IMG/VR virus record: IMGVR_UViG_3300027749_002876
Span: 62,001 to 126,000 of that record
Reading direction: 5' to 3' (one strand)
DNA: 64,000 bases
This document shows, one piece after another, positions 1,733-64,000 of the stretch. Position 1 is the stretch's first letter. Every line of letters starts with the position of its first letter. Under the pieces are notes generated by a model. That model searched no databases, had not been told where the DNA came from, and saw only the letters and a list, made by a program, of their open reading frames with translations. A program made the position numbers and the translations under genes.

Positions 1733-1944
1733 GTGGAAGAAAAGTATTAGTGCAAGACGGCAACACAGAAAAAGCATTACGGAAATTCAAAAAGAAGATT
1801 ACTGATTCTGGGTTACTGCAGGAAGTTAGGGATAGACAAGAATTTGTCAAGCCCACTATCCGTCGTAAACTTGCAAAAAGTCAGGCAAAAAGACGCTGGC
1901 AGAAATACTTGCGTGACCAAAGTCTTCCTAAGAAAGAATTTTAA
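1729..1944 (+). CDS. rpsU: 30S ribosomal protein bS21
   Basis: EKALRKFKKK...GLLQEVRDRQEFVKPT signature, basic 71 aa. Confidence 0.9.
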   Translation: MSGRKVLVQDGNTEKALRKFKKKITDSGLLQEVRDRQEFVKPTIRRKLAKSQAKRRWQKYLRDQSLPKKEF

Positions 1945-52682: not shown

Positions 52683-53249
52683 TTAGTCAACCTTGGGCAA
52701 GGGTGCTATAATTTTATGTAACCAGTGATTGTATATATTGACGTTTAATGGAGTGTCTATCCATTGCTGTAATTTTTCTATTAGATTACCTTCTAATATA
52801 TCTTTAAAGAGTATGACTTTACGAATATGGCCATATTTTTTAGCAAATTTAACTCTTTGAATTCGTCTAGCGAGTTCTGTTTCATTAAATGGAGGATGAG
52901 ATTTAGGAAGAATTATATGACTCCGTTCCATACACCATTTGGCATATTTATAATCAGAGTCATCAATTAAAATAGTATCTATTATATGTTGTAATCCAAA
53001 ATCAAAATAATGACTACAGGTAATTGCTGTGTATTTTTTTTCTATTTCTTCTAAATATGGAGTTTTTCTAGAACCAGAATATAATACATTTTCTGCACCA
53101 TTATTTTTAATAATAGCCAACTTAAAGTGTAATCTTAATGTATTAGGCCTAGCCCGCACATCAATATTGGTTAAATCATAATCTTTACTATCTATTACTG
53201 CGGCTAACATATCTCCTGCCGCACCAGGATTATATAATACTTGATACAT
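52683..53249 (-). CDS. Hypothetical protein (P-loop/sulfotransferase-like N-terminus)
   Basis: VLYNPGAAGD; ATAAATA-4-ATG. Confidence 0.6.
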   Translation of the reverse strand: MYQVLYNPGAAGDMLAAVIDSKDYDLTNIDVRARPNTLRLHFKLAIIKNNGAENVLYSGSRKTPYLEEIEKKYTAITCSHYFDFGLQHIIDTILIDDSDYKYAKWCMERSHIILPKSHPPFNETELARRIQRVKFAKKYGHIRKVILFKDILEGNLIEKLQQWIDTPLNVNIYNHWLHKIIAPLPKVD

Positions 53250-53265
53250 AATGTATTTATCTAGG

Positions 53266-53287
53266 AAAAGGTCGTTAACGACCTTTT
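53266..53287. terminator. Terminator at the distal end of the tRNA array
   Basis: AAAAGGTCG-TTAA-CGACCTTTT. Confidence 0.8.
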
Positions 53288-53292
53288 GTTTT

Positions 53293-53368
53293 TGGCATCC
53301 CGGGTAAGCCTCGAACTTACAACCCCTGGTTTTGGAGACCAGTGCTCTGCCAATTGAGCTACCGAGAT
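53293..53368 (-). tRNA. tRNA-Trp(CCA)
   Basis: Cloverleaf, encoded CCA end. Confidence 0.93.
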
Positions 53369-53375
53369 ATATTCT

Positions 53376-53597
53376 TTATGCGTTTTTTCTAATACGCTTG
53401 AGGTATTCTCTACCCACAAGTCCTGCTTCAATTTCTTGAAGTGCAGTCACAATAGGACCTGCTTTAGAGACTAGTGTAGAACGATGTCCACGCTTTAACT
53501 CTCTTACTCTATGTGAAGCGATAAGAACTAAATCAAATCGATTACCAACCATATTAACGGCGTCTTCACTTGTATATCTTGCTCTGCTTTCAGTCAT
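53376..53597 (-). CDS. rpoZ: RNA polymerase omega subunit
   Basis: AR.T.EDA...VGNRFDLVLIAS.R.REL...TAL.EI..G. Confidence 0.9.
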   Translation of the reverse strand: MTESRARYTSEDAVNMVGNRFDLVLIASHRVRELKRGHRSTLVSKAGPIVTALQEIEAGLVGREYLKRIRKNA

Positions 53598-53608
53598 TTT
53601 CTTCCTTT

Positions 53609-54208
53609 TTAAAATTCAAACATTAATCTTTTCATTGTCTCAAAATAAATTTTAGGTCTTAATGCTAATGCAGGCCTTAATGTTAATACAACTCTTTCAT
53701 TATCTGATTGTGAATTATCCCAATCGTGAAATATTTCGGTATTAAACAATATTGCTTCATTGGGCTGAGCCACCATTGATTTAACCGGGGAGTGTTTAGT
53801 TTTATCAAATCCAACACATTCCCTTGATCCATTATGTTTAGGATCGATTTCATACATAGATAAATCTTCATCACTATACCAGCTGGTCACACACTTATCA
53901 TCTAATATTTTAGAAGTATAATTTATACTAACATGGTCAAATGATCCGTCTTTATGAGCCCTATATGTCATATGCGGCTTTGATATGAATAACGATACCC
54001 GATCAATTTCTAATGGTGGAAATTTTAAGGGAATCATACTCAGCATTTTTTTAGATTCATCTGGCTGTAATTTATAATGAGTAAAATCTTCATTTATCTT
54101 ATAAATATCCGGGGTGATTACATTGCAATAATCTATTATAGACTGTATACCGGCGTGAGTATATCTAATATAATAAGGACTACAATCTTCAATGATTTCG
54201 TATTTCAT
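53609..54208 (-). CDS. Fe(II)/2OG oxygenase- or cupin-like protein
   Basis: AHKD...LFNT...H...N...R..L..R. Confidence 0.6.
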   Translation of the reverse strand: MKYEIIEDCSPYYIRYTHAGIQSIIDYCNVITPDIYKINEDFTHYKLQPDESKKMLSMIPLKFPPLEIDRVSLFISKPHMTYRAHKDGSFDHVSINYTSKILDDKCVTSWYSDEDLSMYEIDPKHNGSRECVGFDKTKHSPVKSMVAQPNEAILFNTEIFHDWDNSQSDNERVVLTLRPALALRPKIYFETMKRLMFEF

Positions 54209-54210
54209 GC

Positions 54211-54864
54211 TTACTCTAAAAATAATAGGTTGTTATTTTTAAATACATCTCTCCAGTATCCTGTGTTAGGTATCAGAGCCCATAATTTAGTATTTTCAAA
54301 AACTATCAATGTTCTATTTTTTTTTGTTTGATTTAATGCGACCGCAACCCCATTAAACCAGGGATGAAAATCATCTCCTAGTAATAATCCGGTATCGGAT
54401 TCATACTTTTCAATATCATGTTTAACATCCAATAATGTATGTGAAGCATCAATAAAGGTAAGATCGTAATGTTTTACTTTCTCAAAATCTTTGCTAGAAG
54501 TAGGGTGTACATTTATATTAGCATACATTTCTTCACCTATACAAAATCTAAATGCATCATGCCATCCTGTAGCTTTTGCAATTTCTCTTGCATCAGCATA
54601 CATAATAGGATCGCCTAGTGCAAATTGCAAATTTTCAAACTCAATATTTAATAATGATTGGCTAGAAACAATTCTAAAATTATCAACTATATCCATGCTT
54701 ACAGAAGAATTTTTACCTCTATAGAGGGCAGTAGTAGAACTACCCAAAAAACAACCTATTTCTAAAATAGAACCATTATCAGGAACATAACCAGCCAATG
54801 TTGAAAGAATTATTAATTCTTTTTCGAGCATCCAACCCGGAATGTTTACATTGTATTTTTGCAT
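54211..54864 (-). CDS. Class I SAM methyltransferase
   Basis: PGWM, LEIGC..GSST, FIDASH, GDD. Confidence 0.85.
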   Translation of the reverse strand: MQKYNVNIPGWMLEKELIILSTLAGYVPDNGSILEIGCFLGSSTTALYRGKNSSVSMDIVDNFRIVSSQSLLNIEFENLQFALGDPIMYADAREIAKATGWHDAFRFCIGEEMYANINVHPTSSKDFEKVKHYDLTFIDASHTLLDVKHDIEKYESDTGLLLGDDFHPWFNGVAVALNQTKKNRTLIVFENTKLWALIPNTGYWRDVFKNNNLLFLE

Positions 54865-54884
54865 ATTGTATTTATGTTTATATT

Positions 54885-54960
54885 TGGAGCGGGAAATCGG
54901 GTTCGAACCGACGACATTCACGTTGGCAACGTGATGCTCTACCAACTGAGCTATTCCCGC
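54885..54960 (-). tRNA. tRNA-Gly(GCC)
   Basis: Cloverleaf. Confidence 0.95.
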
Positions 54961-54967
54961 ATATTCT

Positions 54968-55042
54968 TGGTACATCGACACGGTTTCGAACCGCGGACCC
55001 TCTCCGTGTAAAGGAGACGCTCTACCCCTGAGCTATCGATGC
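54968..55042 (-). tRNA. tRNA-Val(TAC)
   Basis: Cloverleaf. Confidence 0.95.
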
Positions 55043-55052
55043 ATATTTTTAT

Positions 55053-55232
55053 TTAACCCCCTTGAGAGCTGTCTTTAACTTCTGTTTCTCTAGCAATTTT
55101 TTCAAACGCTTCATCTTCATTCTTTTGATCCTCAATCATTCTTGGATCAGGCTTACGAAAGATTTTGTCATAGTTGTTTGCATATTCTTGTTGACTGACA
55201 CTGTATGGTCTTGGACTAGAACCTTTGCTCAC
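55053..55232 (-). CDS. Small protein, 59 aa (MSKGSSPRPYSVSQQEY...DKIF), GTG start, not in the ORF track
   Basis: GTGA overlap with the upstream ORF. Confidence 0.6.
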   Translation of the reverse strand: MSKGSSPRPYSVSQQEYANNYDKIFRKPDPRMIEDQKNEDEAFEKIARETEVKDSSQGG

Positions 55233-55399
55233 TTCTTGTCCCCTTTACCCCCACTGTATGATCGCAAACCTTCTTGTGCAATCTTAGCATAGCTACGCAA
55301 AAATGAACCACGTACATGTGGATCAAGAATTTGAGCGGCTGCAATCTTTACTAGCTTACCGATTTTAACGGCTTTTGGGTCATAACCTCTGCATGTCAT
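55229..55399 (-). CDS. Small hypothetical protein
   Basis: AGGA SD before MTCRGYD. Confidence 0.6.
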   Translation of the reverse strand: MTCRGYDPKAVKIGKLVKIAAAQILDPHVRGSFLRSYAKIAQEGLRSYSGGKGDKK

Positions 55400-55422
55400 A
55401 CTATCTTCCTTTGTTAAAAACT

Positions 55423-55499
55423 TGGTCGGAATAGTAGGATTCGAACCTACGACCTCTTGCTCCCAAAGCAAGCGCACTACCAGGCTGTGCTACACTCCG
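55423..55499 (-). tRNA. tRNA-Pro(TGG)
   Basis: Cloverleaf. Confidence 0.95.
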
Positions 55500-55503
55500 T
55501 AAT

Positions 55504-55577
55504 TGGATGCGGGTGACAGATTCGAACTGCCGATGCACCTGGCTTATGAGACCGGTGTGGTGACCACCCAACCCGCG
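55504..55577 (-). tRNA. Atypical initiator-like tRNA(CAT)
   Basis: CGCGGG 5' end, C1:A72 mismatch, truncated D-arm. Confidence 0.7.
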
Positions 55578-55581
55578 TATT

Positions 55582-56268
55582 TCACAATTCTGCATAATTA
55601 GTAATACTTGGTGGTTTAGCAAACGCATCCACATACATAATCTTACTGTTATCTTTTATTGTTAATTTATTAATGTAATTATACACTACTTCAAAAGTTT
55701 GTTTGTATATTTCGGGATTATCGTATGTAAAATGCGGAGCTATAGCTGTTGCTATTGCACCTTTGTCATTGTGTTCGGCAAATGCCCTCATCATGTGAGC
55801 TTGCATTGCTTTGCTTCCTGCATACCCCGCATAACTTGTCCATTCATTACGATTGAACTTTACTGCCATATATGATATAATAAAAATAATTTTACTATTT
55901 TCATTCATTCGTTTTAATGCTTCTACACCCAAAACATGAGGTATATGGCATGCAAGTCTTATATTCTCTTCCCATCTTTTTAAGTCAACTACACTAGTAG
56001 AAGTAAAGCAATTTTCATCATTTGGATAAGAACCTGAATTGGAATTAAAAAGAATCATATCAACAGTATCAACATCTTTGGTCACTTCATTAAATGCTTC
56101 TACTACACATTGAACACTATCAAAGTTTGCTTTGATATCATGTGGATGTCCTGTATTGTAATTCTTGTGAGATACAATATAAACGTTATGACCATCAGTA
56201 CGCATACGCAATACTAGGTCATTACCAAACTTACCGGGTTCACCTCCCCCTATTATCACTATGTTCAT
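55582..56268 (-). CDS. Short-chain dehydrogenase/reductase-like protein
   Basis: IGG...G.FG, YAGSK (YxxxK). Confidence 0.75.
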   Translation of the reverse strand: MNIVIIGGGEPGKFGNDLVLRMRTDGHNVYIVSHKNYNTGHPHDIKANFDSVQCVVEAFNEVTKDVDTVDMILFNSNSGSYPNDENCFTSTSVVDLKRWEENIRLACHIPHVLGVEALKRMNENSKIIFIISYMAVKFNRNEWTSYAGYAGSKAMQAHMMRAFAEHNDKGAIATAIAPHFTYDNPEIYKQTFEVVYNYINKLTIKDNSKIMYVDAFAKPPSITNYAEL

Positions 56269-56288
56269 ATTATGAGTCCTCAAGTATT

Positions 56289-56364
56289 TGGTGGAGGATA
56301 CCAGGATCGAACTGGTCACCTACTGCTTGCAAAGCAGCCGCTCTCCCAAATGAGCTAATCCCCC
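56289..56364 (-). tRNA. tRNA-Ala(TGC)
   Basis: Cloverleaf with G3:U70. Confidence 0.95.
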
Positions 56365-56438
56365 ATGTAGAAACACACTTGATATAGTAGCAAAAGCTAT
56401 CACGGATGAACCCGAGTTTAGTCAAATATGTTTTTATA
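56365..56438 (-). ncRNA. Candidate small RNA with a long closing stem
   Basis: AUAUAAAAACAUAUUUGA/UCAAGUGUGUUUCUACAU. Confidence 0.5.
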
Positions 56439-56515
56439 TGGTGCCCCAGAGGAGACTCGAACTCCTAAAATTTGGCTTCTAAGACCAACACGTATACCAA
56501 TTCCGTCACCAGGGC
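56439..56515 (-). tRNA. tRNA-Leu(TAG) with short variable region
   Basis: Leu-type D-arm, 77 nt. Confidence 0.88.
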
Positions 56516-56516
56516 A

Positions 56517-56605
56517 GTTATAATATAACACACTACGAATCTCCTTCTAAGTTATGGACCTAGCGAGTACTCCAGTTGTGTTCATGTAATGTGTTATATT
56601 ATAAC
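56517..56605 (-). ncRNA. Candidate small RNA / 16-bp inverted repeat overlapping a promoter -10
   Basis: GTTATAATATAACACA/TGTGTTATATTATAAC; TTGACA-17-TATAAT at 56598-56626. Confidence 0.5.
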
Positions 56606-56690
56606 ATATATCTATTTATATGTCAACTATCTTTGGATAAGAAGAACTCAGACGTATGATAACCATTTACCGGTTAGTTATTACAGAGGT

Positions 56691-57227
56691 CTAAGCCGTG
56701 TTATATATTGCTAGATCACCATAGCGTTTTAAACTACACTCTATCAATTGTTTATGTTTTTCTACATCCAAGAAACCTTTAATATAAAGTGTTTCTCTCA
56801 TAAAATCTTCCTTTACTCTATGCAAACATGCGGTAAGATTAAGCAGGTATGCTATGGGCACTTGAGGCAATATAGGAGTTATCCATTCTTTGCCATTAAA
56901 TATTTCAAGCGAGTCGCATTTACCTTTTAATACTACATGATACCCAGCCGGTTCAGCTTGTGCAATGTGTTTATATTCATTAGATAAATTATCACCGGGA
57001 TAATAATCATGGTGAGGATTAACTACTATTTGTTGAAACTTATGCGTAAATGTTGTGATATCTATTATTGGTATTTGATCTAATAAACTTCTATATTGTT
57101 GATAGTTATTTTCTTTACCAAGAACTTCTTTTGTTTCCCAAAAATTTTGATGATAGGTATGTTGATCACCTAACTCAAAACTAGTTTCAGTAACGTCTAT
57201 ATCTAGTGGAACAAATAATAATTTCAT
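56691..57227 (-). CDS. Oxygenase/cupin-like hypothetical protein
   Basis: PHHD, EP.GY, H.V...R; TTAAATA-4-ATG. Confidence 0.6.
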   Translation of the reverse strand: MKLLFVPLDIDVTETSFELGDQHTYHQNFWETKEVLGKENNYQQYRSLLDQIPIIDITTFTHKFQQIVVNPHHDYYPGDNLSNEYKHIAQAEPAGYHVVLKGKCDSLEIFNGKEWITPILPQVPIAYLLNLTACLHRVKEDFMRETLYIKGFLDVEKHKQLIECSLKRYGDLAIYNTA

Positions 57228-57244
57228 CTAGTATTTAATAACAT

Positions 57245-57318
57245 TGGAGCGGGGTAACAGAATCGAACTGTCAGCATTAGCTTGGAAGGCTAAGGTATTA
57301 CCACTATACGAACCCCGC
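57245..57318 (-). tRNA. tRNA-Gly(TCC)
   Basis: Cloverleaf. Confidence 0.95.
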
Positions 57319-57330
57319 ATAAATATATTT

Positions 57331-57495
57331 ATGTACATATATGACGCTATCACAAAAACAGGACTTGTTATACACTTATCAATGAGTGCTGAACATACAT
57401 TTTACATTATGGTATTTGATATTGACAACTTCACATTGACCATGAAATTCTTCAACAACATCGAAACAGCACTTGCTTTTATACAAGCACTTTAG
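57331..57495 (+). CDS. Small protein antisense to the tRNA array
   Basis: CATAAATA just upstream of ATG. Confidence 0.5.
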   Translation: MYIYDAITKTGLVIHLSMSAEHTFYIMVFDIDNFTLTMKFFNNIETALAFIQAL

Positions 57496-57500
57496 TTAAC

Positions 57501-57578
57501 TGGAGCAACGGGTCAGATTTGAACTGACGGTTTTACGGATTTGCAATCCGTTGCATTGGGCCGCTCTGCCACCGTTGC
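57501..57578 (-). tRNA. tRNA-Cys(GCA)
   Basis: Cloverleaf, U73. Confidence 0.92.
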
Positions 57579-57582
57579 ATAT

Positions 57583-57792
57583 TGCTCCTGCATCCCCCGG
57601 CGGTAATTATACTGCATCAATCATCGGACTAGACGAATAATCCACGACAACATCACACACAGCTTCCACCCGCTTCCCGACAGGGACCGCTCTCGTGTTG
57701 CTAACGGCCTTTCGGTTCGAAGACTACCACCCGTAGTTGTCACACTACTTCTCATCCTGTGGGTCACAGTATCCGGAGACACCCGGAACGTT
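57583..57792 (-). ncRNA. Candidate ~210-nt structured RNA
   Basis: GC-rich; several hairpins; long-range GGUGGUAGU/AUUACCGCC pairing. Confidence 0.65.
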
Positions 57793-57793
57793 C

Positions 57794-57881
57794 TGGCGGA
57801 GTATGTAGGAATCGAACCTACCCACCGGTTGCCCAGTGACAGATTAGCAATCTGTTGCCTTAACCGCTCGGCCAATACTCC
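57794..57881 (-). tRNA. tRNA-Ser(GCT)
   Basis: Long variable arm. Confidence 0.95.
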
Positions 57882-57888
57882 TGATACT

Positions 57889-57965
57889 TGGTGCCTCGAA
57901 CTGGACTCGAACCAGTAACCTAACGATTATGAGTCGTGTGCTCTAACCAATTGAGCTATCAAGGC
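57889..57965 (-). tRNA. tRNA-Ile2(CAT), lysidine-type
   Basis: CGACUCAUAAUCG anticodon arm as in ileX. Confidence 0.8.
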
Positions 57966-57971
57966 ATTGTT

Positions 57972-58056
57972 TGGTACGACTGGCCGGAATCGAACCGGCA
58001 CGCTGTTGGGCGAGAGATTTTAAGTCTCTTGTGTCTACCTATTTCACCACAGTCGC
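57972..58056 (-). tRNA. tRNA-Leu(TAA)
   Basis: Long variable arm. Confidence 0.95.
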
Positions 58057-58102
58057 AAATCTTGTTACTATTATATATCATAATAGATTTGTTGTCAATG
58101 AA

Positions 58103-58319
58103 TTTGTAAGTAGTATCACCATCGTTATTGATACCATTCACCCGTGTAATAAAGTCGACCGGGACTCGGTACGCTACTTGGGATTCATCCAGCTGATACG
58201 CCATCATGTATGCCGATCCCACTCAAGCGATCAGCCGGGCATCGAACCCGCAACCTTCTACTAACTCAGTCCTTCGAAGAAACCTCATTAGCGTGACTTC
58301 ACTTGCTAACACTTACAAA
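58103..58319 (-). ncRNA. Candidate ~215-nt structured RNA
   Basis: 9-bp closing stem TTTGTAAGT/ACTTACAAA; internal T-arm-like CGGG-UUCGAUG-CCCG. Confidence 0.6.
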
Positions 58320-58320
58320 A

Positions 58321-58860
58321 CTATTTTTTCCACCACCAAACCAATCGTTCAACTGTTGGAAAATTTTTATTGATATCTAAAACAATTGGTTTACAAACTG
58401 ATAAGTTCAACTTATTAGTCCATTCATAAAATGTTTTATAACTTAATCTATGTTTAGTACCAAAATTAGATATATGATCTTCATTATGACCTATATAATC
58501 TAAAAATGGTTGCATTCTTACTACAATATATCCACCGGGCTTGATCCAACTTACAATTTTTTCTACATCATAGAATTGATTTTCTACGGGTTTATATTGT
58601 ATGGAACCTAAACAAAGTGCGATATCTATTGATTCTTTTTCAAAGACGACATCATTTACTGAAGCCTGCATATCACTATTTGGATATGGATCAGCGTCAA
58701 AGCCAATCAAATTATGTATTTTGTCCTTGAAAAGATTTTCCCCACATCCCACATCAATTACTTTTTGCGGAAATAAGGAATTTACCTCTTCAATTAAATT
58801 GTAACCTGAATATGTGAATCCACGCATTCTAGTATCATTGTAAATATAAGCTTCATTCAT
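58321..58860 (-). CDS. Class I SAM methyltransferase (paralogue of the C-terminal part of 50287-51015)
   Basis: SG..L.EEVN...P.KVIDVGCG.N.FK..I.NLIG.D, CLGSI. Confidence 0.8.
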   Translation of the reverse strand: MNEAYIYNDTRMRGFTYSGYNLIEEVNSLFPQKVIDVGCGENLFKDKIHNLIGFDADPYPNSDMQASVNDVVFEKESIDIALCLGSIQYKPVENQFYDVEKIVSWIKPGGYIVVRMQPFLDYIGHNEDHISNFGTKHRLSYKTFYEWTNKLNLSVCKPIVLDINKNFPTVERLVWWWKK

Positions 58861-58875
58861 GAAGATATTTATCGA

Positions 58876-58950
58876 TGGCGACTCGTGGGAGAATCGAACT
58901 CCCGTAATCGGATAGACAATCCGAAGTAATGACCATTATACGAACGAGCC
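58876..58950 (-). tRNA. tRNA-Asp(GTC)
   Basis: Cloverleaf. Confidence 0.93.
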
Positions 58951-59034
58951 TAAATTAGTAGTAGTTTCTATATCACCCATTGAAACTAATAAACATTGAG
59001 AAAGAGCTTGCGTAGCAAGATTTCTATTTGTTCT

Positions 59035-59118
59035 TGGTGGAGACGGTTGGAGTTGAACCAACAGTGCCGAAGCGGAAGATTTACAGTCTCCTGGGGTTAC
59101 CAATTTTCCTACATCTCC
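59035..59118 (-). tRNA. tRNA-Tyr(GTA)
   Basis: Cloverleaf with variable arm. Confidence 0.93.
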
Positions 59119-59119
59119 A

Positions 59120-59325
59120 AATTAGGATAAGCTACTTGTTTCCACACAAGCCCTTAATTGAGCGGTTACTCTGTCCATCTCTTTTATTCTATATGTCTGT
59201 GTGCAGAGAGATACTGCCTATCAGAGTCTGCCGGGGTAGTTTCCATCCCTGCTTTTACGGTTTTCTGCCACCGGATCTCTATCGCTAATCAAACGCTACT
59301 TTGACGAAAGTAGTAACGGGATTCT
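59120..59325 (-). ncRNA. Candidate ~200-nt structured RNA between tRNA-Glu and tRNA-Tyr
   Basis: Hairpins CUACUUU-CGUC-AAAGUAG and CUUGU-GUGGAA-ACAAG; no credible ORF. Confidence 0.55.
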
Positions 59326-59326
59326 T

Positions 59327-59401
59327 TGGAAGAGCTACGGGGAATCGAACCCCGCTTGCCTGGATGAAAACCAGATGTCCTAACCGATAGACGATAGCTC
59401 C
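59327..59401 (-). tRNA. tRNA-Glu(TTC)
   Basis: Cloverleaf. Confidence 0.93.
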
Positions 59402-59402
59402 A

Positions 59403-59530
59403 TGTTATTAGTTTTGCTGACGCACTGTTTGCTATGCTCAACGGAATTGCCAGCTGGACGTACCGTTTATATACATAGTTACTCAGGGTTGACGTTTCCC
59501 CCATGGCTTACATCAGCAAAACTAATAACA
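59403..59530 (-). ncRNA. Candidate ~128-nt RNA closed by a perfect 18-bp stem
   Basis: TGTTATTAGTTTTGCTGA/TCAGCAAAACTAATAACA. Confidence 0.65.
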
Positions 59531-59767
59531 CTCTATATGAAAACACATTATGGGAACTACATTCGTCTGTCCAGGACCGTCTCCTGTACCCCGGCTTGTA
59601 CACCGGGAACTCTGAACTTCGTCATTACTGCCTAACTGCCCGTCACGTTCATAACTTTCGTTATCATACGCTTCATGATGTATGTCTTGGCGTGTATCCG
59701 TCGATACCCTTATAACCTTCGTACACCCTAACGGATCAGGTAACCCTTAATATGTTTACATATAGAG
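59531..59767 (-). ncRNA. Candidate ~237-nt RNA with a ~20-bp closing stem
   Basis: CUCUAUAUGUAAACAUAUUA/UAAUGUGUUUUCAUAUAGAG; internal CCCGG..CCGGG. Confidence 0.6.
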
Positions 59768-59800
59768 CCCTGAACTTAACAGGGATATATGAATTCTAAA

Positions 59801-59957
59801 TTTTAAAGAACTCTTGCAACTACTCTATCGTTTGTTGCTATGTGTCTATTATAACACCTTTACCATTTATTGTCAAATTCTTTTTTGTGTCTCTGTGTCC
59901 GAGAACTTGTTCAATCAATCTAAGTATCTATTATAGCACCAACTTGATTTATTGTCA
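59801..59957 (-). promoter_or_regulatory. Tandem sigma70 promoters plus boxA-like antitermination site
   Basis: Two TTGACAATAAAT..TATAAT promoters ~80 bp apart; AGTTCTTTAAAA at 59812-59801. Confidence 0.7.
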
Positions 59958-59993
59958 AACTTTGTGTTGTTGTATTTTTACAACACCTGTTAT

Positions 59994-60068
59994 TGGTCCG
60001 GCGTAAGGGAATCGAACCCCTATAAACACTTTAGAAGAATGTTGTCCTATCCGTTGAACGAACGCCAG
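59994..60068 (-). tRNA. tRNA-Arg(TCT)
   Basis: Cloverleaf. Confidence 0.92.
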
Positions 60069-60139
60069 ATATATTTCTTACTTGTCTCTATTATAGAGGA
60101 TTGTTGATTTGTTGTCAAGTTTGACAACAACTATTTGAA

Positions 60140-60215
60140 TGGCTCCTCAAGATGGGATCGAACCACCGACATTCTGATTAACAGTCAGACGCAACTACCG
60201 CTGTGCTATTGAGGA
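60140..60215 (-). tRNA. tRNA-Asn(GTT)
   Basis: Cloverleaf. Confidence 0.95.
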
Positions 60216-60222
60216 ATATTTT

Positions 60223-60298
60223 TGGTGCCCACACCATGATTCGAACACGGCACCTACGCATTACAAGTGCGTTGCTCTACCAAATGAGCTATGTGGGC
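60223..60298 (-). tRNA. tRNA-Thr(TGT)
   Basis: Cloverleaf. Confidence 0.95.
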
Positions 60299-60359
60299 TT
60301 GTGTCTTACGACATGTTTATTTAACAGCTATTGTATCATAGGAAAACTTTTATGTCAAC

Positions 60360-60920
60360 CTATGATAGCAATATTCTGCTGTGTTTGGGAACACCTGCAA
60401 GCAAGTATTCCATTTGGTCAGCAAGAATTGTTCTATGTTGTAGAATCATATTTTCGTAGTGGTTTGGGATATACGGAGTGTATAATAATTCCATACGGGA
60501 ATCTTTCAATGTCTTATGACCTTTTTTGCTGTTACAATCTTTACATGCCGTAACAACGTTCATCCAGGTGTTTTCGCCACCTTTACTTTTTGGATGAATA
60601 TGGTCTCTACTTAACGCATGGTAGTTAGCAAAGTATTCTCCGCAATATGCACAAACGTGTCTGTCACGACCAAACAATGTTTTATTAGTTAGTGCCACAC
60701 ATGAATGTTTATATGGATTGAATCCATGACCTTTGATAGCAATAATGCTATTAGCTTCCAAGTAACTTAATGTACCGTCATTTTGCATACCACCACGATA
60801 TTTAGCCACAATATTGCCCATACTCCATGCAATGGCATCTTTTGCTTTATAGGTAATTGCGTCATCATTTGATATCCATTGCCGGGGAACTCCCGAGATA
60901 TCTAGTGCTAGAACAGCCAT
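60360..60920 (-). CDS. HNH endonuclease
   Basis: LFGRDRHVCAYCG...SRDHIHP.SKGG...W.NVVTAC..CN..KG. Confidence 0.92.
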   Translation of the reverse strand: MAVLALDISGVPRQWISNDDAITYKAKDAIAWSMGNIVAKYRGGMQNDGTLSYLEANSIIAIKGHGFNPYKHSCVALTNKTLFGRDRHVCAYCGEYFANYHALSRDHIHPKSKGGENTWMNVVTACKDCNSKKGHKTLKDSRMELLYTPYIPNHYENMILQHRTILADQMEYLLAGVPKHSRILLS

Positions 60921-60968
60921 GTAGTACTCCTTTTCTGTTATTATCACTATATGTATTTAATATTATAT

Positions 60969-61043
60969 TGGCGGGTCCTGCAGGAATCGAACCCACATCT
61001 CCAAGTTCGAAGCATGGCATTCTATCCATTGAACTAAGGACCC
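60969..61043 (-). tRNA. tRNA-Arg(TCG)
   Basis: Cloverleaf with one anticodon-stem mismatch. Confidence 0.88.
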
Positions 61044-62030
61044 TTATTGAGATTGTACTCCCTTTACGATTTCTTGTAAAGATTGATCTAACCAATCTGT
61101 GTTAGTTAGTTTTGGGAGTAATTCCATTACTACATATGCTTGTATTAATGGATCTGAACACAAATAATCTGTTAGTTGTTTGGTTCTATTAAATTCCGTT
61201 ATCTCATTTAAAAAATTTAAATGAGGTTGTGCTTTTATATATGTTGGGTGATAATTTTTTGCATAAGAAAAATCAAATATTCCTGCATCTGATTCACTAC
61301 ATATAGATTCTAATAAATCTATAAAGTTTGATTCATATATTTTCAATAAATTAATTGAATAATAATTTTTTGGTATGTGATATGGTTCTACATACATATC
61401 ACTATTGACCTCATGAGGATTATTTGCATGTCTAATGTCATACCAATGTTTATATAAATCTAGATGATGTCTATAATCGTATTGTTTCATACTAGGACTA
61501 ATATAATCCAAAGGATAAGATGATGAAAATATATCATCATATGATACAACAAATTTATTACGATTTTCTATTGTGTTTTCGCAAGGAAAAGTTAAATTAT
61601 ATTTTGTAGTTGTTCCAACAAAATCAAAGTATAATGGCCATTTGGTAATACAATTTAAATTTCCTACTGCTTGTGAATTTAAATCAGTTGCTGTTATTTG
61701 AATAATTATTGGATCTCGGTCAAACGTAAGTATCCATGCAACCGTCTCTTGGAATTTTAAATCATTTCTAGCATTTAATAAAAATATTTTGTTTTCTGTT
61801 GGTTTGTTTAATATTAACCACATTATCAATTCTTTGATTCCACAATGTGTTGGAATTCTATGGTGCAAATGACTGGTACCGATACCACCGTATTTAAGAC
61901 TAGCTGATGTATTAAGAGGGTCATCTATTGTTAGATGTGATAAATCTATTTCACTCTTACTAATACACCAATTTATATAACTTCCAGAGTAACCCGGTGG
62001 ATATAAAATATAAATGTTTTTACGGAGCAT
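61044..62030 (-). CDS. Hypothetical protein (P-loop/sulfotransferase-like N-terminus)
   Basis: IYILYPPGYSGSYI; very AT-rich. Confidence 0.6.
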   Translation of the reverse strand: MLRKNIYILYPPGYSGSYINWCISKSEIDLSHLTIDDPLNTSASLKYGGIGTSHLHHRIPTHCGIKELIMWLILNKPTENKIFLLNARNDLKFQETVAWILTFDRDPIIIQITATDLNSQAVGNLNCITKWPLYFDFVGTTTKYNLTFPCENTIENRNKFVVSYDDIFSSSYPLDYISPSMKQYDYRHHLDLYKHWYDIRHANNPHEVNSDMYVEPYHIPKNYYSINLLKIYESNFIDLLESICSESDAGIFDFSYAKNYHPTYIKAQPHLNFLNEITEFNRTKQLTDYLCSDPLIQAYVVMELLPKLTNTDWLDQSLQEIVKGVQSQ

Positions 62031-62289
62031 CTAGTATTTGAGTACTAACAATATTACAATTATATTGAGTTGCTTTCTGCATAATAAAATCAATATATTC
62101 TTGTGCAGCCGATTGATCTATCCAATATCTATCACAGGTAACATCATCAACCATTATTCCAATTCCGTCTGTTTTGTTTGCCGCAGTCATTTCTTGAATT
62201 TTAATTTCTCTATCACTATCAAGTGCCTCATGTCCTGCCCAATCTGCAACCGTTAGCCATTTAATTTTAGTAATTTTAGTTAGTGCCAT
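62020..62289 (-). CDS. Hypothetical protein
   Basis: AGGAG SD; late promoter upstream. Confidence 0.7.
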   Translation of the reverse strand: MALTKITKIKWLTVADWAGHEALDSDREIKIQEMTAANKTDGIGIMVDDVTCDRYWIDQSAAQEYIDFIMQKATQYNCNIVSTQILDAP

Positions 62290-62352
62290 TTATGTTCTCC
62301 TGTATACTCTATTTATCTAAAAATAACATTAATTATTACAAATGTACTTATT

Positions 62353-62428
62353 TGGTGCCAACAGCTGGACTTGAACCAGCAACACAAGAATTTTCAATCC
62401 TCTGCTCTACCATTGGAGCTATGTCGGC
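62353..62428 (-). tRNA. tRNA-Phe(GAA)
   Basis: Cloverleaf. Confidence 0.95.
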
Positions 62429-62433
62429 TTGTT

Positions 62434-62508
62434 TGGTGGATGATAGTGGGGTCGAACCACTGACCTCTTTCTTGTCACGAAAGTATTCTACCGCTGAAAT
62501 AATCATCC
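62434..62508 (-). tRNA. tRNA-Val(GAC)
   Basis: Cloverleaf; unusual G32. Confidence 0.85.
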
Positions 62509-62584
62509 TGGTGCTCCTAGATGGATTCGAACCATCGACTTCTCCATACCAAAGAGATATTTTACCATTGCAAACTATGGGAGC
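62509..62584 (-). tRNA. tRNA-Thr(GGT)
   Basis: Cloverleaf. Confidence 0.88.
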
Positions 62585-62745
62585 ATATAAAAGTGGGAGC
62601 CTAGCTATCTTATTGTTAATAAACCTCACTAGATTGTCTCGTATAGGCAAGTTTATACACCCATCAATCATACTATAGTGTCATCACAGTTAACCCCACC
62701 GTGACTAGATTGACAGGGACTCAAACCTATCGTCTATCCCTAAAC

Positions 62746-62819
62746 TGGCACCCGGGGTAGGAATCGAACCTACAATAGCAGAGTCAAAGTCTGTTGTGTT
62801 ACCACTACACTACCCGGGA
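62746..62819 (-). tRNA. tRNA-Gln(TTG)
   Basis: Cloverleaf; U1:U72 mismatch. Confidence 0.92.
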
Positions 62820-62826
62820 ATAAATT

Positions 62827-62903
62827 TGGTAGCCTCACCCTGACTCGAACAGGGGACCTTCCGCTTATCAAGCGGATGCTCTAACCAACTGAGCTATGAG
62901 GCT
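62827..62903 (-). tRNA. tRNA-Ile(GAT)
   Basis: Cloverleaf. Confidence 0.95.
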
Positions 62904-62911
62904 AAACTGTT

Positions 62912-62986
62912 TGGTGGATGTAAGTAGATTTGAACTACTGACCTATTCCGTATGAAGGAATTGCACTACCGCTGTGCTATACATCC
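62912..62986 (-). tRNA. tRNA(CAT), probably elongator Met
   Basis: Cloverleaf; loop UUCAUAC. Confidence 0.85.
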
Positions 62987-62988
62987 AT

Positions 62989-63064
62989 TGGGGTGAAGGA
63001 CGAGACTTGAACTCGCAACAACTGGAATCACAATCCAGGGCTCTACCATTGAGCTACCGACACC
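62989..63064 (-). tRNA. tRNA-His(GTG)
   Basis: G-1:C73; two acceptor-stem mismatches. Confidence 0.85.
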
Positions 63065-63070
63065 ATATGT

Positions 63071-63157
63071 TGGAGGAAGATAACAGAATCGAACTGTCAC
63101 CGTGTAAACAGTGGGACGGTTTTCAAGACCGTGTCCGCGCCATGCAGCCTATCTTCC
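63071..63157 (-). tRNA. Atypical tRNA-Ser(TGA), possible 8/4 fold
   Basis: GGAAGAUA/UAUCUUCC acceptor, long variable arm, no U8. Confidence 0.8.
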
Positions 63158-63159
63158 TA

Positions 63160-63345
63160 TTATGCTTTTTTATCTACTTGATGATTACTATGTGTAGGTT
63201 CTAATTTACCTACTTTATCATATAGATACTGTACAACTTCTAAGTATTGTTTATTAGTTGCAGGATCTTGTAATGTTTTATAAACTGTTGTACGATATTG
63301 ATGATTGGTAATATCGTTTACCGCTGATATAGTTTGAATTATCAT
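63160..63345 (-). CDS. Small hypothetical protein
   Basis: ATAAATA upstream. Confidence 0.55.
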   Translation of the reverse strand: MIIQTISAVNDITNHQYRTTVYKTLQDPATNKQYLEVVQYLYDKVGKLEPTHSNHQVDKKA

Positions 63346-63373
63346 AATGTATGTATTTATTAATAAATACAGT

Positions 63374-63925
63374 ATGATACTCACAACAACTCCAATTAAG
63401 CAACATACTCAGTTAGTACATTTAGATATGCCATACACATATGAAGAAGTTTTAAATGAGCTAAACACATATGAGTTTAATGAAATTCATCCTTATCGTT
63501 ATAATTCTGCAATAACCACCAAAATTCTTAGTGAAATAAGACAACTAATAGTTGACTACTCTTTTATAGATAAATTTTATGAAATAAAAGATTTTCAAAA
63601 GTTGTGGAATAATGTATCTAAGGAAGAACTTAAAAAAAAATGTAAGTTCGATTGTTCTTTACATCTTGATAAACCTAAATTTTCTCTTACACCCCACCTT
63701 GATAGTAGACAAATTGTAATAGTTGGGATGATTTTCTTGAACCCAGTGAATGATATTAAACAAAACTCTGTACTATATGATACAGAAAATATGCTGAATC
63801 CACAATATGTACCTTCATCATTTGGAGAAGGATGGGTTATGGCTAATGCACATAACACATGGCACTCAGGTGGAAACTCATCTGACTATGATAGATATAG
63901 TATATTGTTCACCTATACCATATAG
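63374..63925 (+). CDS. Fe(II)/2OG oxygenase-like protein
   Basis: PHLD...WHSG...R; ATAAATA-4-ATG. Confidence 0.7.
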   Translation: MILTTTPIKQHTQLVHLDMPYTYEEVLNELNTYEFNEIHPYRYNSAITTKILSEIRQLIVDYSFIDKFYEIKDFQKLWNNVSKEELKKKCKFDCSLHLDKPKFSLTPHLDSRQIVIVGMIFLNPVNDIKQNSVLYDTENMLNPQYVPSSFGEGWVMANAHNTWHSGGNSSDYDRYSILFTYTI

Positions 63926-64000
63926 ATATTTATACTATCATGATTACAATGTAAATTGGATTTGAACCAACATTTCCAGGACAAGACGCCGGGTTTCCTA

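What the first reader, a model, noticed from the sequence alone, without database searches (positions are those of the whole stretch)
56365..59767. Three different RNA candidates share the same closing-helix sequence
Seen on the transcribed strand: 56438-56365 AUAAAAACAUAUU...AGUGUGUUUCUAC; 56605-56517 AUAUAACACAUU...AGUGUGUUAUAU; 59767-59531 AUGUAAACAUAUU...AAUGUGUUUUCAU. The interiors are unrelated (about 40, 50 and 195 nt). G-U pairs fit the minus strand. Inference: a common processing or protein-binding handle (AACAYAUU/ARUGUGUU) that releases a family of small RNAs from the tRNA precursor, i.e. a modular ncRNA cassette system. Caveat: the 56517 repeat overlaps a promoter -10.
Basis: partly seen in the sequence, partly recalled or inferred. 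Interest (0 to 1): 0.7.

Follow-up and report, generated by a model that had tools for sequence, protein, structure and literature searches.

The report
Shared hairpin handle in phage tRNA arrays
The three hairpins belong to a widespread, apparently undescribed family of RNA modules in the tRNA gene arrays of uncultured freshwater phages: a nearly constant closing stem that starts directly after a tRNA's CCA end encloses many unrelated structured inserts, which suggests that tRNA processing is used to release varied small RNAs.

Summary
All three candidates fold with the stated closing helices at the stated coordinates. The shared sequence is the core of a longer handle: 5' (A)CCA|UAUAAAAACACAUU, then a variable interior, then AGUGUGUUUCUAUA|UGG(U) 3'. 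A strict pattern for it hits at least 120 IMG/VR contigs. The same pattern read backwards hits none, and 596 Gb of prokaryote genomes give 4 hits, of which 2 are phage-like tRNA arrays and 2 are chance.

Nearly every copy lies in a phage tRNA array on the tRNA strand and begins at the first base after a tRNA's CCA. Tested tRNA genes followed by a handle hairpin:
- Lys(UUU): 72 of 96
- Gln(UUG): 19 of 88
- Glu(UUC): 16 of 89

The stem covaries at most positions and uses G.U pairs on the tRNA strand. The 125 unique interiors fall into 79 unrelated classes, and the interiors are themselves structured. Candidate 3's 195-nt interior is a conserved structured RNA that elsewhere sits in a canonical handle flush after a tRNA.

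Best reading: modular RNA cassettes released by tRNA maturation and capped by a protective stem. Release, processing enzyme and cargo function are untested. No Rfam family or paper matches.

The parts
56365..56438 (-). cand1: canonical handle hairpin that fills the whole spacer between tRNA(UAG) and tRNA-Ala. The 5' arm UAUAAAAACAUAUU starts at the first base after CCA. The 3' arm is AGUGUGUUUCUACA, and then U plus the GG of tRNA-Ala can pair with the CCA. The interior is about 45 nt.
   Evidence: Sequence and fold. The same slot in array B and in L010 has the same arms with unrelated interiors, and the hairpin is absent in L008 and L009. The same interior class occurs in L121, L080, L120 and L125, with compensatory changes in its sub-hairpin.
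56439..56515 (-). 77-nt tRNA with anticodon UAG and a short variable arm. Its 3' CCA is the first three pairs of the cand1 stem.
   Evidence: ARAGORN, Rfam tRNA, comparison with relatives.
56289..56364 (-). tRNA-Ala(UGC), directly 3' of cand1.
56517..56605 (-). cand2: degenerate family member. Its arms UAUAACACAUU/AGUGUGUUAUA correspond to the consensus with a symmetric 3-bp deletion. It lies between a promoter -10 and tRNA(UAG), and it is an insertion relative to array B and to L008-L010.
   Evidence: Fold, z -6.5. Alignment with array B shows an insertion of about 70 nt. Upstream regions of relatives.
56598..56626 (-). Perfect sigma-70-type promoter (TTGACA, 17 nt, TATAAT). Its -10 lies inside the cand2 5' arm.
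   Evidence: The promoter is conserved in array B and L008-L010 without the hairpin.
59531..59767 (-). cand3: handle-type closing helix (CUAUAUGUAAACAUAUUAAGGG / CCCAUAAUGUGUUUUCAUAUAG) around a conserved structured cargo RNA of about 195 nt.
   Evidence: Fold. About 98.7% identity between arrays A and B, against about 80% in the flanks. Homologues in 16 contigs. Consensus structure of 60 pairs, 24 of them with compensatory changes. Low but non-zero depth in metatranscriptome contigs.
59402..59531 (-). Neighbouring 130-nt hairpin module with a different closing helix. It is flush between cand3 and tRNA-Glu, which shows the same bead-on-a-string design.
   Evidence: Fold, z -5.05. Conserved in relatives.
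59848..59876 (-). Perfect sigma-70-type promoter about 80 nt upstream of cand3. A second one lies at 59930-59958.

Best explanation
These are members of one family of RNA modules built into the polycistronic tRNA transcripts of a large group of uncultured, mostly freshwater phages.

Anatomy. Each module is a hairpin with a closing stem of about 19 bp. The stem begins at the nucleotide after the 3' CCA of the upstream tRNA. The CCA pairs with a conserved UGG just 3' of the module. The next 14 bp are the nearly constant handle UAUAAAAACACAUU/AGUGUGUUUCUAUA, which carries one tolerated A.C spot and a U.G wobble. The module often ends 3 nt before, or overlapping, the 5' end of the next tRNA. Inside the stem sits a cargo of 29 to about 195 nt. 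Cargoes fall into dozens of unrelated classes, and the interiors are structured overall.

Proposed mechanism (inferred, not shown). The host's tRNA-maturation enzymes cut at the two tRNA borders: RNase P at the downstream tRNA, and an endonuclease that cuts after CCA, or RNase III within the stem, at the upstream tRNA. This releases the module as a small RNA with near-blunt ends, which the long stem protects from 3' exonucleases. The handle would therefore act as a processing and stability adaptor that can carry any cargo. Cargoes are exchanged between phages and between tRNA slots by recombination in the conserved arms.

The function of the cargoes is unknown. Decoys or sponges directed at host factors are one possibility.
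For: Shown:
- The family exists and is phage-array specific: at least 120 contigs against 0 for the reversed control and 2 chance hits in 596 Gb of prokaryote genomes.
- Modules are flush with tRNA ends. 88 of 121 unique pattern hits start at distance 0 from an ARAGORN tRNA on the same strand, and many end 3 nt before the next tRNA.
- UGG follows the 3' arm in about 96% of copies although the search pattern did not require it. Where no tRNA precedes, the triplet is UCA or UUA, which still pairs with UGG through G.U.
- The stem is an RNA-level helix. There are 47 unique arm pairs with compensatory changes at most of the 14 positions, and G.U pairs lie on the tRNA strand only at positions 8-14.
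- In cand3 homologues the 5' arm changes from GUAAACAUAUU to GAAAAUACAUU against an unchanged 3' arm, by swapping C-G and U.G pairs.
- The interiors are selected as RNA. They are more stable on the tRNA strand in 92 cases against 32 (p = 3e-8), have 47% GC in a 37% GC genome, and show compensatory changes within several classes.
- The system is modular. 125 unique interiors fall into 79 classes, the same class follows different tRNAs, and three unrelated interiors occupy one slot in arrays A, B and L010.
- The handle also carries a large conserved structured RNA, the cand3 type, both behind a tRNA (L139) and behind a promoter leader (window).
- Non-canonical flush hairpins, including the 130-nt type, are likewise followed by UGG in 35 of about 65 cases.
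- Other spacer RNAs of the same array reach depths in the thousands in metatranscriptome contigs while the ORFs are at zero. Array ncRNAs of this phage group therefore accumulate as RNA.
Against: - There is no direct evidence that canonical modules are released or stable. The four metatranscriptomes did not cover the cand1 or cand2 interiors, although this phage was probably absent from them.
- cand3-type depth is low, 11-78.
- No processing enzyme was identified. The phage lacks recognisable RNase III, RNase Z, CCA-adding enzyme and RtcB, and no neighbouring protein family occurs in more than 32 of 120 loci.
- The strong bias for tRNA-Lys(UUU), Glu(UUC) and Gln(UUG) is not explained by a pure carrier model. 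It hints at a role tied to those tRNAs.
- A stem flush with the downstream tRNA would leave RNase P no single-stranded leader. From general knowledge of bacterial RNase P, this usually lowers its affinity.
- The near-invariance of the arms is partly due to ascertainment, because loci were found with an exact pattern.
Confidence: 0.5

Rival explanations
1. The hairpin is a cis-acting 3' trailer that controls the upstream tRNA. By pairing the tRNA's ACCA end with UGG(U), it delays or directs 3'-end maturation, or protects the CCA, of tRNA-Lys(UUU), Glu(UUC) and Gln(UUG). These are the tRNAs that known anticodon nucleases target. The interior only has to fold.
For: - Flush hairpins follow Lys(UUU) in 76%, Glu(UUC) in 33% and Gln(UUG) in 23% of cases, and nearly all other tRNAs in 7% or less (Thr(GGU) 17% and Leu(UAG) 14% lie between). 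Lys(CUU) scores 1 of 33 for any flush hairpin and 0 of 33 for the canonical handle.
- The CCA/UGG pairing is conserved even with non-canonical arms.
- A73 is matched by U after the UGG in 81 of 88 cases.
Against: - The handle also closes RNAs that have no tRNA upstream: cand2, cand3 and tandem modules.
- The cand3 cargo has conserved single-stranded segments and its own covarying helices, which indicates a function of the cargo.
- With G73 (the Gln tRNAs), the base after UGG is mostly A, so pairing does not track the discriminator.
Confidence: 0.2
2. The hairpins are plain processing punctuation. The stem of about 19 bp is an RNase III-type site, like those between T7 early genes, that separates units of the long transcript. 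The interiors are neutral filler, and the sequence similarity reflects common descent.
For: - The stem has a uniform length: 3 + 14 + about 1.7 further bp, ending in a junction.
- It is AU-rich with a conserved weak spot.
- Covariation shows that pairing rather than sequence is the main constraint.
Against: - Interiors are selected for sense-strand structure and are GC-enriched.
- Cargo classes are conserved across contexts.
- Most tRNA junctions in the same arrays manage with spacers of 3-10 nt and no hairpin.
- No phage RNase III is present, and cleavage was not tested.
Confidence: 0.12
3. The element is selfish or recombinational DNA. It could be a miniature inverted-repeat element, or an attC-like site, that inserts directly behind tRNA genes or mediates shuffling of tRNA cassettes.
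For: - Presence/absence differences at identical slots. cand2 is absent in array B, and cand1 is absent in L008 and L009. Many tRNA pairs occur both filled and empty.
- Identical modules follow different tRNAs.
- Tandem copies occur.
- Arm sequences are far more uniform than the adjacent tRNA-Lys genes, 95% against 68% pairwise identity.
Against: - The outer four bases covary as an inverted repeat (TATT/AATA, TAGA/TCTA, TGTA/TACA), not as a direct repeat, so there is no target-site duplication.
- Orientation is always that of the tRNAs.
- Each genome holds only 1-4 copies, all inside tRNA arrays.
- G.U pairs are strand-specific.
- The genome has no Y1 transposase and no tyrosine recombinase.
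Confidence: 0.08
4. The similarity between three AT-rich hairpins is due to chance.
For: Single 8-mer counts in the window are not above shuffles.
Against: - At least 120 hits against 0 for the control pattern.
- Positional precision at the tRNA ends.
- Covariation in the stem.
- L139 links cand3 to the canonical context.
Confidence: 0.01

Closest known systems
tRNA-linked hairpin RNAs released by tRNA-processing enzymes (murine gammaherpesvirus 68 tRNA-miRNA units cut by tRNase Z; plant tRNA-snoRNA dicistrons; E. coli 3'ETS-leuZ; named from my own knowledge)
   Same: A virus-encoded tRNA is followed without a gap by a stem-loop RNA in the same transcript, so tRNA maturation would define the ends of the hairpin. 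The cargo RNA is unrelated to the tRNA.
   Different: The host is bacterial. One nearly constant stem of about 19 bp, which pairs with the tRNA's own CCA, carries dozens of unrelated cargoes. The module is often also flush with a downstream tRNA. Processing has not been demonstrated here.
Stable RNAs of the phage T4 tRNA cluster (species 1 and 2, rnaC/rnaD; from my own knowledge)
   Same: Small structured RNAs of unknown function are encoded among phage tRNA genes and matured from the tRNA precursor.
   Different: There is no sequence or Rfam relation. The present family is defined by a shared handle with exchangeable interiors, which is not known for T4.
RNase III processing hairpins between phage T7 early genes
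   Same: Long AU-rich stems with a conserved internal weak spot punctuate a polycistronic phage transcript.
   Different: Here the stems abut tRNA ends exactly, the interiors are large and structured, and cleavage by RNase III is untested.
Y RNAs bound by Ro/Rsr (including bacterial and phage YrlA with tRNA-like domains)
   Same: A conserved closing stem formed by the 5' and 3' ends encloses variable modules. About 20% of cargo classes carry a T-loop-like GGUUC motif.
   Different: There is no TROVE/Rsr gene in the genome, no Rfam Y RNA hit, and no bulged-helix Ro site was identified.
Bacterial miniature inverted-repeat elements such as Neisseria Correia elements, and integron attC sites
   Same: Conserved imperfect inverted repeats flank a variable centre. 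They show presence/absence polymorphism and are transcribed into hairpins.
   Different: There is no target duplication. Orientation is fixed. Each genome has a few copies, all behind tRNA genes. No transposase or integrase is present.

Membership tests
Any Rfam 15 family | Covariance-model match at or near the gathering score | tested here: not met
   Only tRNA hits were found over the window at gathering score. Over 53000-64000 at E up to 1, nothing meaningful lay on cand1-3. The only overlap with cand2 was a mir-374 match on the opposite strand at E 0.32.
RNase III substrate hairpin | Uninterrupted or nearly uninterrupted dsRNA of about two helical turns | tested here: met
   CCA/UGG (3 bp) + 14 bp + a mean of 1.7 further bp gives about 19 bp, with one A.C spot.
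RNase III substrate hairpin | Staggered double cleavage by RNase III | not testable with these tools
   This needs an in vitro assay or an rnc mutant. The phage has no RNase III gene.
tRNA-linked processed hairpin RNA (TMER-like) | The hairpin starts directly after the tRNA 3' end, on the same strand and in the same transcript | tested here: met
   Distance 0 in 88 of 121 unique hits. cand1 lies at 56438, directly after the tRNA that ends at 56439.
tRNA-linked processed hairpin RNA (TMER-like) | Release of a discrete hairpin RNA by tRNA 3'-processing | tested here: inconclusive
   Four metatranscriptomes gave no coverage of cand1 or cand2, but none of the phage ORFs either.
MITE / Correia-like mobile element | Target-site duplication flanking the terminal inverted repeats | tested here: not met
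   The outer bases covary as inverted complements, not as direct repeats. The comparison of filled and empty sites gave no consistent duplication.
MITE / Correia-like mobile element | Many dispersed copies in either orientation | tested here: not met
   Each record has 1-4 copies, all in tRNA arrays and all on the tRNA strand.
IS200/IS605-type or REP/RAYT hairpin elements | Associated Y1 (HUH) transposase | tested here: not met
   PF01797 is absent from the 524-kb record.
Integron attC site | Associated tyrosine recombinase (IntI) and cassette array | tested here: not met
   PF00589 is absent.
Y RNA / Rsr system | Ro/TROVE protein partner | tested here: not met
   PF05731 is absent. A host partner cannot be excluded.
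Structured RNA (general) | Covariation that maintains the helix on one strand | tested here: met
   Handle: compensatory changes at most of 14 positions, and 55 G.U against 13 A.C outside position 5. cand3 cargo: 24 of 60 pairs with double changes.

The most novel reading that the evidence does not exclude
Phage tRNA arrays host an exchangeable cassette system for small RNAs. A conserved 'CCA-clamp' stem uses host tRNA maturation to excise, and then protect, a highly diverse repertoire of structured RNAs. These RNAs are swapped between phages by recombination in the stem. They act in trans on host factors, for example as decoys or sponges against defences that attack tRNA-Lys, Glu and Gln.
Probability: 0.25. 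Interest if true: 0.85.

Novelty: new variant of a known kind. Interest (0 to 1): 0.74.

Why it matters
Phage tRNA arrays are usually read as lists of tRNA genes. This finding shows that, in a large group of environmental phages, the spacers hold a second and much more diverse layer of structured RNAs organised by a common adaptor stem.

If the adaptor works as proposed, three things follow:
- It is a natural way to produce stable RNAs of arbitrary sequence from a tRNA transcript, and it could be useful as an expression scaffold.
- It gives a simple sequence tag for mining hundreds of new phage RNAs.
- Its preference for the Lys/Glu/Gln tRNAs links it to the conflict over tRNA cleavage between phages and bacteria.

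The handle is short and exact enough to make all of this directly testable in E. coli with standard RNase mutants.

Tried and rejected
- Rfam at gathering and E-value thresholds on the window, and at gathering score on 12 related loci: only tRNAs among the matches listed; for the 12 loci only the best 150 of 300 were shown.
- Cultured phage records, by megablast, blastn and tblastn: only tRNA similarity and no relative of this phage.
- Single-motif enrichment in the window: not significant.
- Genome-wide count of the short motif pair: 15 against 8.7 +/- 4.4, not significant on its own.
- Candidate partner or mobility genes in the 524-kb record: TROVE, RNase III, Y1 transposase, tyrosine recombinase, RNase Z-type metallo-beta-lactamase, CCA-adding enzyme, RtcB, DUF2828 and PF04308 RNaseH_like were all absent.
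- Neighbour-gene clustering over 120 loci: the commonest family (PF04308-like) is in only 32 loci, so there is no obligatory partner.
- Palindrome excess in the interiors: none, 15 observed against 12.7 in shuffles.
- A common k-mer across cargo classes: only a weak excess of AGGTT/GGTTC, the T-loop-like motif.
- Pairing of the discriminator base with the base after UGG: holds for A73 but not for G73.
- A promoter role for the module's TATAAA: rejected by inspection, because the tRNA T-loop gives a poor -35.
- Metatranscriptome coverage of cand1 and cand2: none, which is uninformative because the phage's ORFs were also uncovered.
- Literature: no paper holds the motif sequence, and the 2023 catalogue of viral structured RNAs does not describe it in its text.

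Full report
CONTEXT
The window is bases 62001-126000 of a 524,565-bp IMG/VR virus record. The finding lies in a dense tRNA array on the minus strand, with 27 tRNA genes in the window and 31 in the whole array. The record also holds a second, inverted and syntenic array of 25 tRNAs. That array belongs to a related genome copy of about 80% identity, called array B here. No cultured phage is related beyond tRNA similarity. Sequencing runs that hold the region are mostly freshwater metagenomes.

THE OBSERVATION
- cand1 (56365-56438) fills the whole spacer between a 77-nt tRNA(UAG) and tRNA-Ala.
- cand2 (56517-56605) lies between a perfect sigma-70 promoter and the same tRNA(UAG).
- cand3 (59531-59767) lies behind two perfect promoters and in front of another 130-nt hairpin and tRNA-Glu.
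Counted singly, the two 8-mers are not enriched in the window. The signal lies in the paired, positioned arrangement.

THE SHARED SEQUENCE IS PART OF A LONGER HANDLE
Comparison with array B and three relatives fetched through a neighbouring ORF (L008, L009, L010) gave the first strong result.
- In the slot tRNA(UAG) to tRNA-Ala, arrays A, B and L010 carry hairpins with the same arms but three completely unrelated interiors.
- L008 and L009 have a spacer of 4-6 nt there.
- A fourth copy lies just outside the window, directly after tRNA-Lys(UUU), at G000:C1:126027-126105.

A strict pattern for the extended arms (TATANAAACAYATT, 33-63 nt, ARTGTGTTTYTA) then gave:
- no hit for the same pattern read backwards;
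- four hits in 596 Gb of prokaryote genomes, two of them phage-like tRNA arrays in MAG contigs and two AT-rich chance hits.

ANATOMY OF THE FAMILY
There are 121-125 unique copies, depending on the search.
- Of 121 unique pattern hits, 88 start at distance 0 from the 3' end of an ARAGORN tRNA on the same strand. A further 24 are preceded by CCA without a called tRNA. Many end 3 nt before the next tRNA.
- The consensus is (A)CCA|UAUAAAAACACAUU, then the interior, then AGUGUGUUUCUAUA|UGG(U).
- The UGG was not in the search pattern but is present in about 96% of copies, so the tRNA's own CCA forms the first three pairs of the stem.
- Where no tRNA precedes (tandem modules), the preceding triplet is UCA or UUA, which still pairs with UGG through G.U.
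- The stem continues only about 1.7 bp beyond the arms, giving a uniform helix of about 19 bp.

A relaxed search found 47 distinct arm pairs. They show compensatory changes at most of the 14 positions:
- TATT/AATA
- TAGA/TCTA
- TGTA/TACA
- AAGCACATT/AGTGTGCTT
- AATGCACT/AGTGCATT
G.U pairs number 55 on the tRNA strand. Outside the one tolerated weak spot at position 5 there are 13 A.C pairs, and none at positions 8-14. This is a helix selected in the transcribed strand, that is, in RNA. The covariation of the outer four bases as inverted rather than direct repeats argues against a target-site duplication.

THE INTERIORS
- They are 29-109 nt long (median 49), have 47% GC in a 37% GC genome, and fold better on the tRNA strand than on the complement in 92 cases against 32 (p = 3e-8).
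- The 125 unique interiors fall into 79 unrelated classes.
- Several classes show compensatory changes within the class. Examples are the sub-hairpin of the cand1 class (UAGC/GCUA, UAAA/UUUA, GAGA/UCUC) and T-arm-like hairpins (CAGGUUCGAAUCCUG, GAGGUUCGAAUCCUC).
- The same class occurs behind different tRNAs. The cand1 class follows Leu(UAG) in the window and in L121, follows Lys(UUU) in L080 and L120, and precedes Tyr in L125.
- Palindromes are not enriched. Apart from a weak excess of the T-loop-like GGUUC, no common motif was found.

THE THREE CANDIDATES ARE HOMOLOGOUS
- cand2's arms are the consensus with a symmetric 3-bp deletion. The whole hairpin is an insertion relative to array B and L008-L010, which keep the promoter.
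- cand3's arms match the consensus at 13 of 17 positions on each side.
- A search with cand3's conserved core found 16 contigs. In L139 this cargo sits flush after a tRNA(UAG) CCA, with arms UAUUAAAAUAUAUU/AGUGUGUUUUAAUA followed by UGGU, which is the canonical context.
- The cand3 cargo has a consensus structure of 60 pairs, 24 of them with compensatory changes, and invariant single-stranded segments. It is therefore a functional RNA in its own right.

WHICH tRNAs
Among 1980 tRNA genes in the fetched loci, a canonical handle directly follows:
- Lys(UUU): 72 of 96
- Gln(UUG): 19 of 88
- Glu(UUC): 16 of 89
- Leu(UAG): 6 of 56
- Thr(GGU): 4 of 41
- Lys(CUU): 0 of 33
- Met: 1 of 170
When any flush hairpin of 12 bp or more is counted, the figures are 76%, 33% and 23% for Lys, Glu and Gln, 17% for Thr(GGU), 14% for Leu(UAG), and 7% or less for the rest. 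The non-canonical hairpins are also mostly followed by UGG.

The loci were chosen because they hold a module, so absolute rates are inflated. The contrast between tRNA types within the same loci stands. Relatedness of the arrays also inflates the counts. Lys(UUU), Glu(UUC) and Gln(UUG) are, from established knowledge, the 2-thiouridine-34 tRNAs and the classic targets of anticodon nucleases. Whether this is the reason for the bias is unknown.

EXPRESSION
Contigs of four freshwater metatranscriptomes gave the following:
- zero depth on the array's ORFs and on the cand1 and cand2 interiors;
- low depth on cand3 (11-78);
- depth in the thousands to twenty thousand on three other spacers (57579-57793, 58057-58320, 59119-59326).
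The contigs are at least 90% alike and run into unlike flanks, so they come from relatives. This shows that array ncRNAs of this phage group accumulate as RNA. It says nothing either way about release of the canonical modules.

MECHANISM
Shown:
- an RNA-level stem that includes the tRNA's CCA;
- exact abutment to the tRNA ends;
- modular, structured cargo;
- horizontal reassortment.
Inferred: release by the enzymes that make tRNA ends, and protection of the product by its long, nearly blunt stem.

The phage encodes no recognisable RNase III, RNase Z, CCA-adding enzyme, RtcB, Ro/TROVE, Y1 transposase or tyrosine recombinase. No neighbouring protein family is present in more than about a quarter of the loci. 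The partner, if there is one, is probably a host enzyme.

The main rival is a cis role on the upstream tRNA through sequestration of its CCA end, which would explain the Lys/Glu/Gln bias. It is weakened by the handle's use without any tRNA (cand2, cand3, tandem copies) and by the conserved cargo of cand3. A purely selfish DNA element is unlikely, given the fixed orientation, the low copy number, the confinement to arrays, the absence of a target duplication and the strand-specific G.U pairs. Recombination in the arms clearly does move cargoes around.

cand2 needs a caveat. The -10 of its own perfect promoter (56603-56598) lies in the 5' arm, so a transcript started there has only the last few bases of that arm. 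The full stem can form only in read-through RNA.

NOVELTY
No Rfam family matches. No paper in the searchable library holds the motif. The large catalogue of viral structured RNAs does not describe it in its text, although some cargo classes may be among its 10,006 unnamed candidates. In design, the closest known things are tRNA-linked hairpins released by tRNA processing, such as the herpesvirus tRNA-miRNA units, tRNA-snoRNA units, 3'ETS sRNAs and the stable RNAs of the T4 tRNA cluster. A single conserved adaptor stem that clamps the CCA and carries dozens of cargoes is a new variant of that kind.

Noticed in passing
G000:C1:126027-126105 (minus); this would be window 64027-64105, just beyond the window end: A fourth, fully canonical handle hairpin lies directly after tRNA-Lys(UUU): CCA|UAUAAAAACACAUUG...CCAGUGUGUUUCUAUAUGG. 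Its interior class recurs in L015, L072 and L125.
   Followed up: yes
window 59402-59531 (minus): A 130-nt hairpin RNA with its own closing helix of about 20 bp, flush between cand3 and tRNA-Glu. In 13 variants from relatives, 12 have an apical loop holding an 8-nt (in one variant 6-nt) perfect palindrome, and the palindrome differs between variants: CCAGCUGG, GUGGCCAC, GCUGCAGC, GUAGCUAC, GCGGCCGC, UUGCAA. In L081, the source of GCGGCCGC, the script found no apical loop and I read the palindrome from the printed sequence. This is the signature of a kissing-loop homodimer. In other phages the module follows tRNA-Glu as CCA|UUUGUUUUGCUGA...UCAGCAAAACAAA|UGGU.
   Followed up: partly
window 59531-59767 (minus), interior: The cand3 cargo is a conserved structured RNA of about 190 nt. 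It has invariant segments (GGGUUACCUGAUCCGUUAGG, GAAGCGUAU, AACGUGACGGGCAGUUAGGCAGUAAUGAC, AGACGGU) and variable covarying peripheral helices. It occurs in 16 viral contigs and matches no Rfam family.
   Followed up: partly
window 57579-57793, 58057-58320 and 59119-59326 (minus): Three further tRNA-array spacers reach summed word depths of about 1,700-21,800 in contigs of freshwater metatranscriptomes, while the neighbouring ORFs are at zero. Two of them are conserved at 73-88% in all relatives. None matches an Rfam family. The 58184-58307 part contains a T-arm-like GGUUGCGGGUUCGAUGCCCGG that is not called as a tRNA.
   Followed up: partly
whole record G000 (524,565 bp): The record is not one simple genome. 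Roughly 1-177 kb and 350-524 kb are syntenic in inverted orientation at about 75-90% identity, and 172924-177012 repeats 520477-524565 directly at 99.6%. It looks like two related phage genomes joined, or a concatenated bin. A related record of 348,701 bp is rated complete.
   Followed up: partly
window 56439-56515 (minus): The tRNA with anticodon UAG is 77 nt long and has a short variable arm in arrays A and B and in L010. L008 and L009 have an ordinary 85-nt long-arm tRNA-Leu(UAG) in the same slot. The short form co-occurs with the trailing hairpin.
   Followed up: no
window 56598-56626, 58070-58098, 59848-59876, 59930-59958 and 60090-60118 (minus): Five perfect 12/12 sigma-70 consensus promoters (TTGACA, 17 nt, TATAAT) lie within 4 kb of the tRNA array. 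This points to a host with a canonical sigma-70.
   Followed up: no
window 1744-1896 (plus): The phage encodes ribosomal protein bS21, and the second genome copy does too. Freshwater huge phages with bS21 have been described (PMC9723584), with lower GC and predicted Bacteroidetes hosts. Whether this phage belongs to that group was not tested.
   Followed up: partly
window 60360-60947 (minus): An HNH endonuclease ORF sits inside the tRNA array. A homologous family occurs in 14 of the 120 module-bearing loci.
   Followed up: no
L030:10795-12261 and 10 other loci: A 488-aa protein with DUF7788 and DUF2828 domains recurs next to module-bearing tRNA arrays in 11 loci. It is absent from this window's genome.
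   Followed up: no
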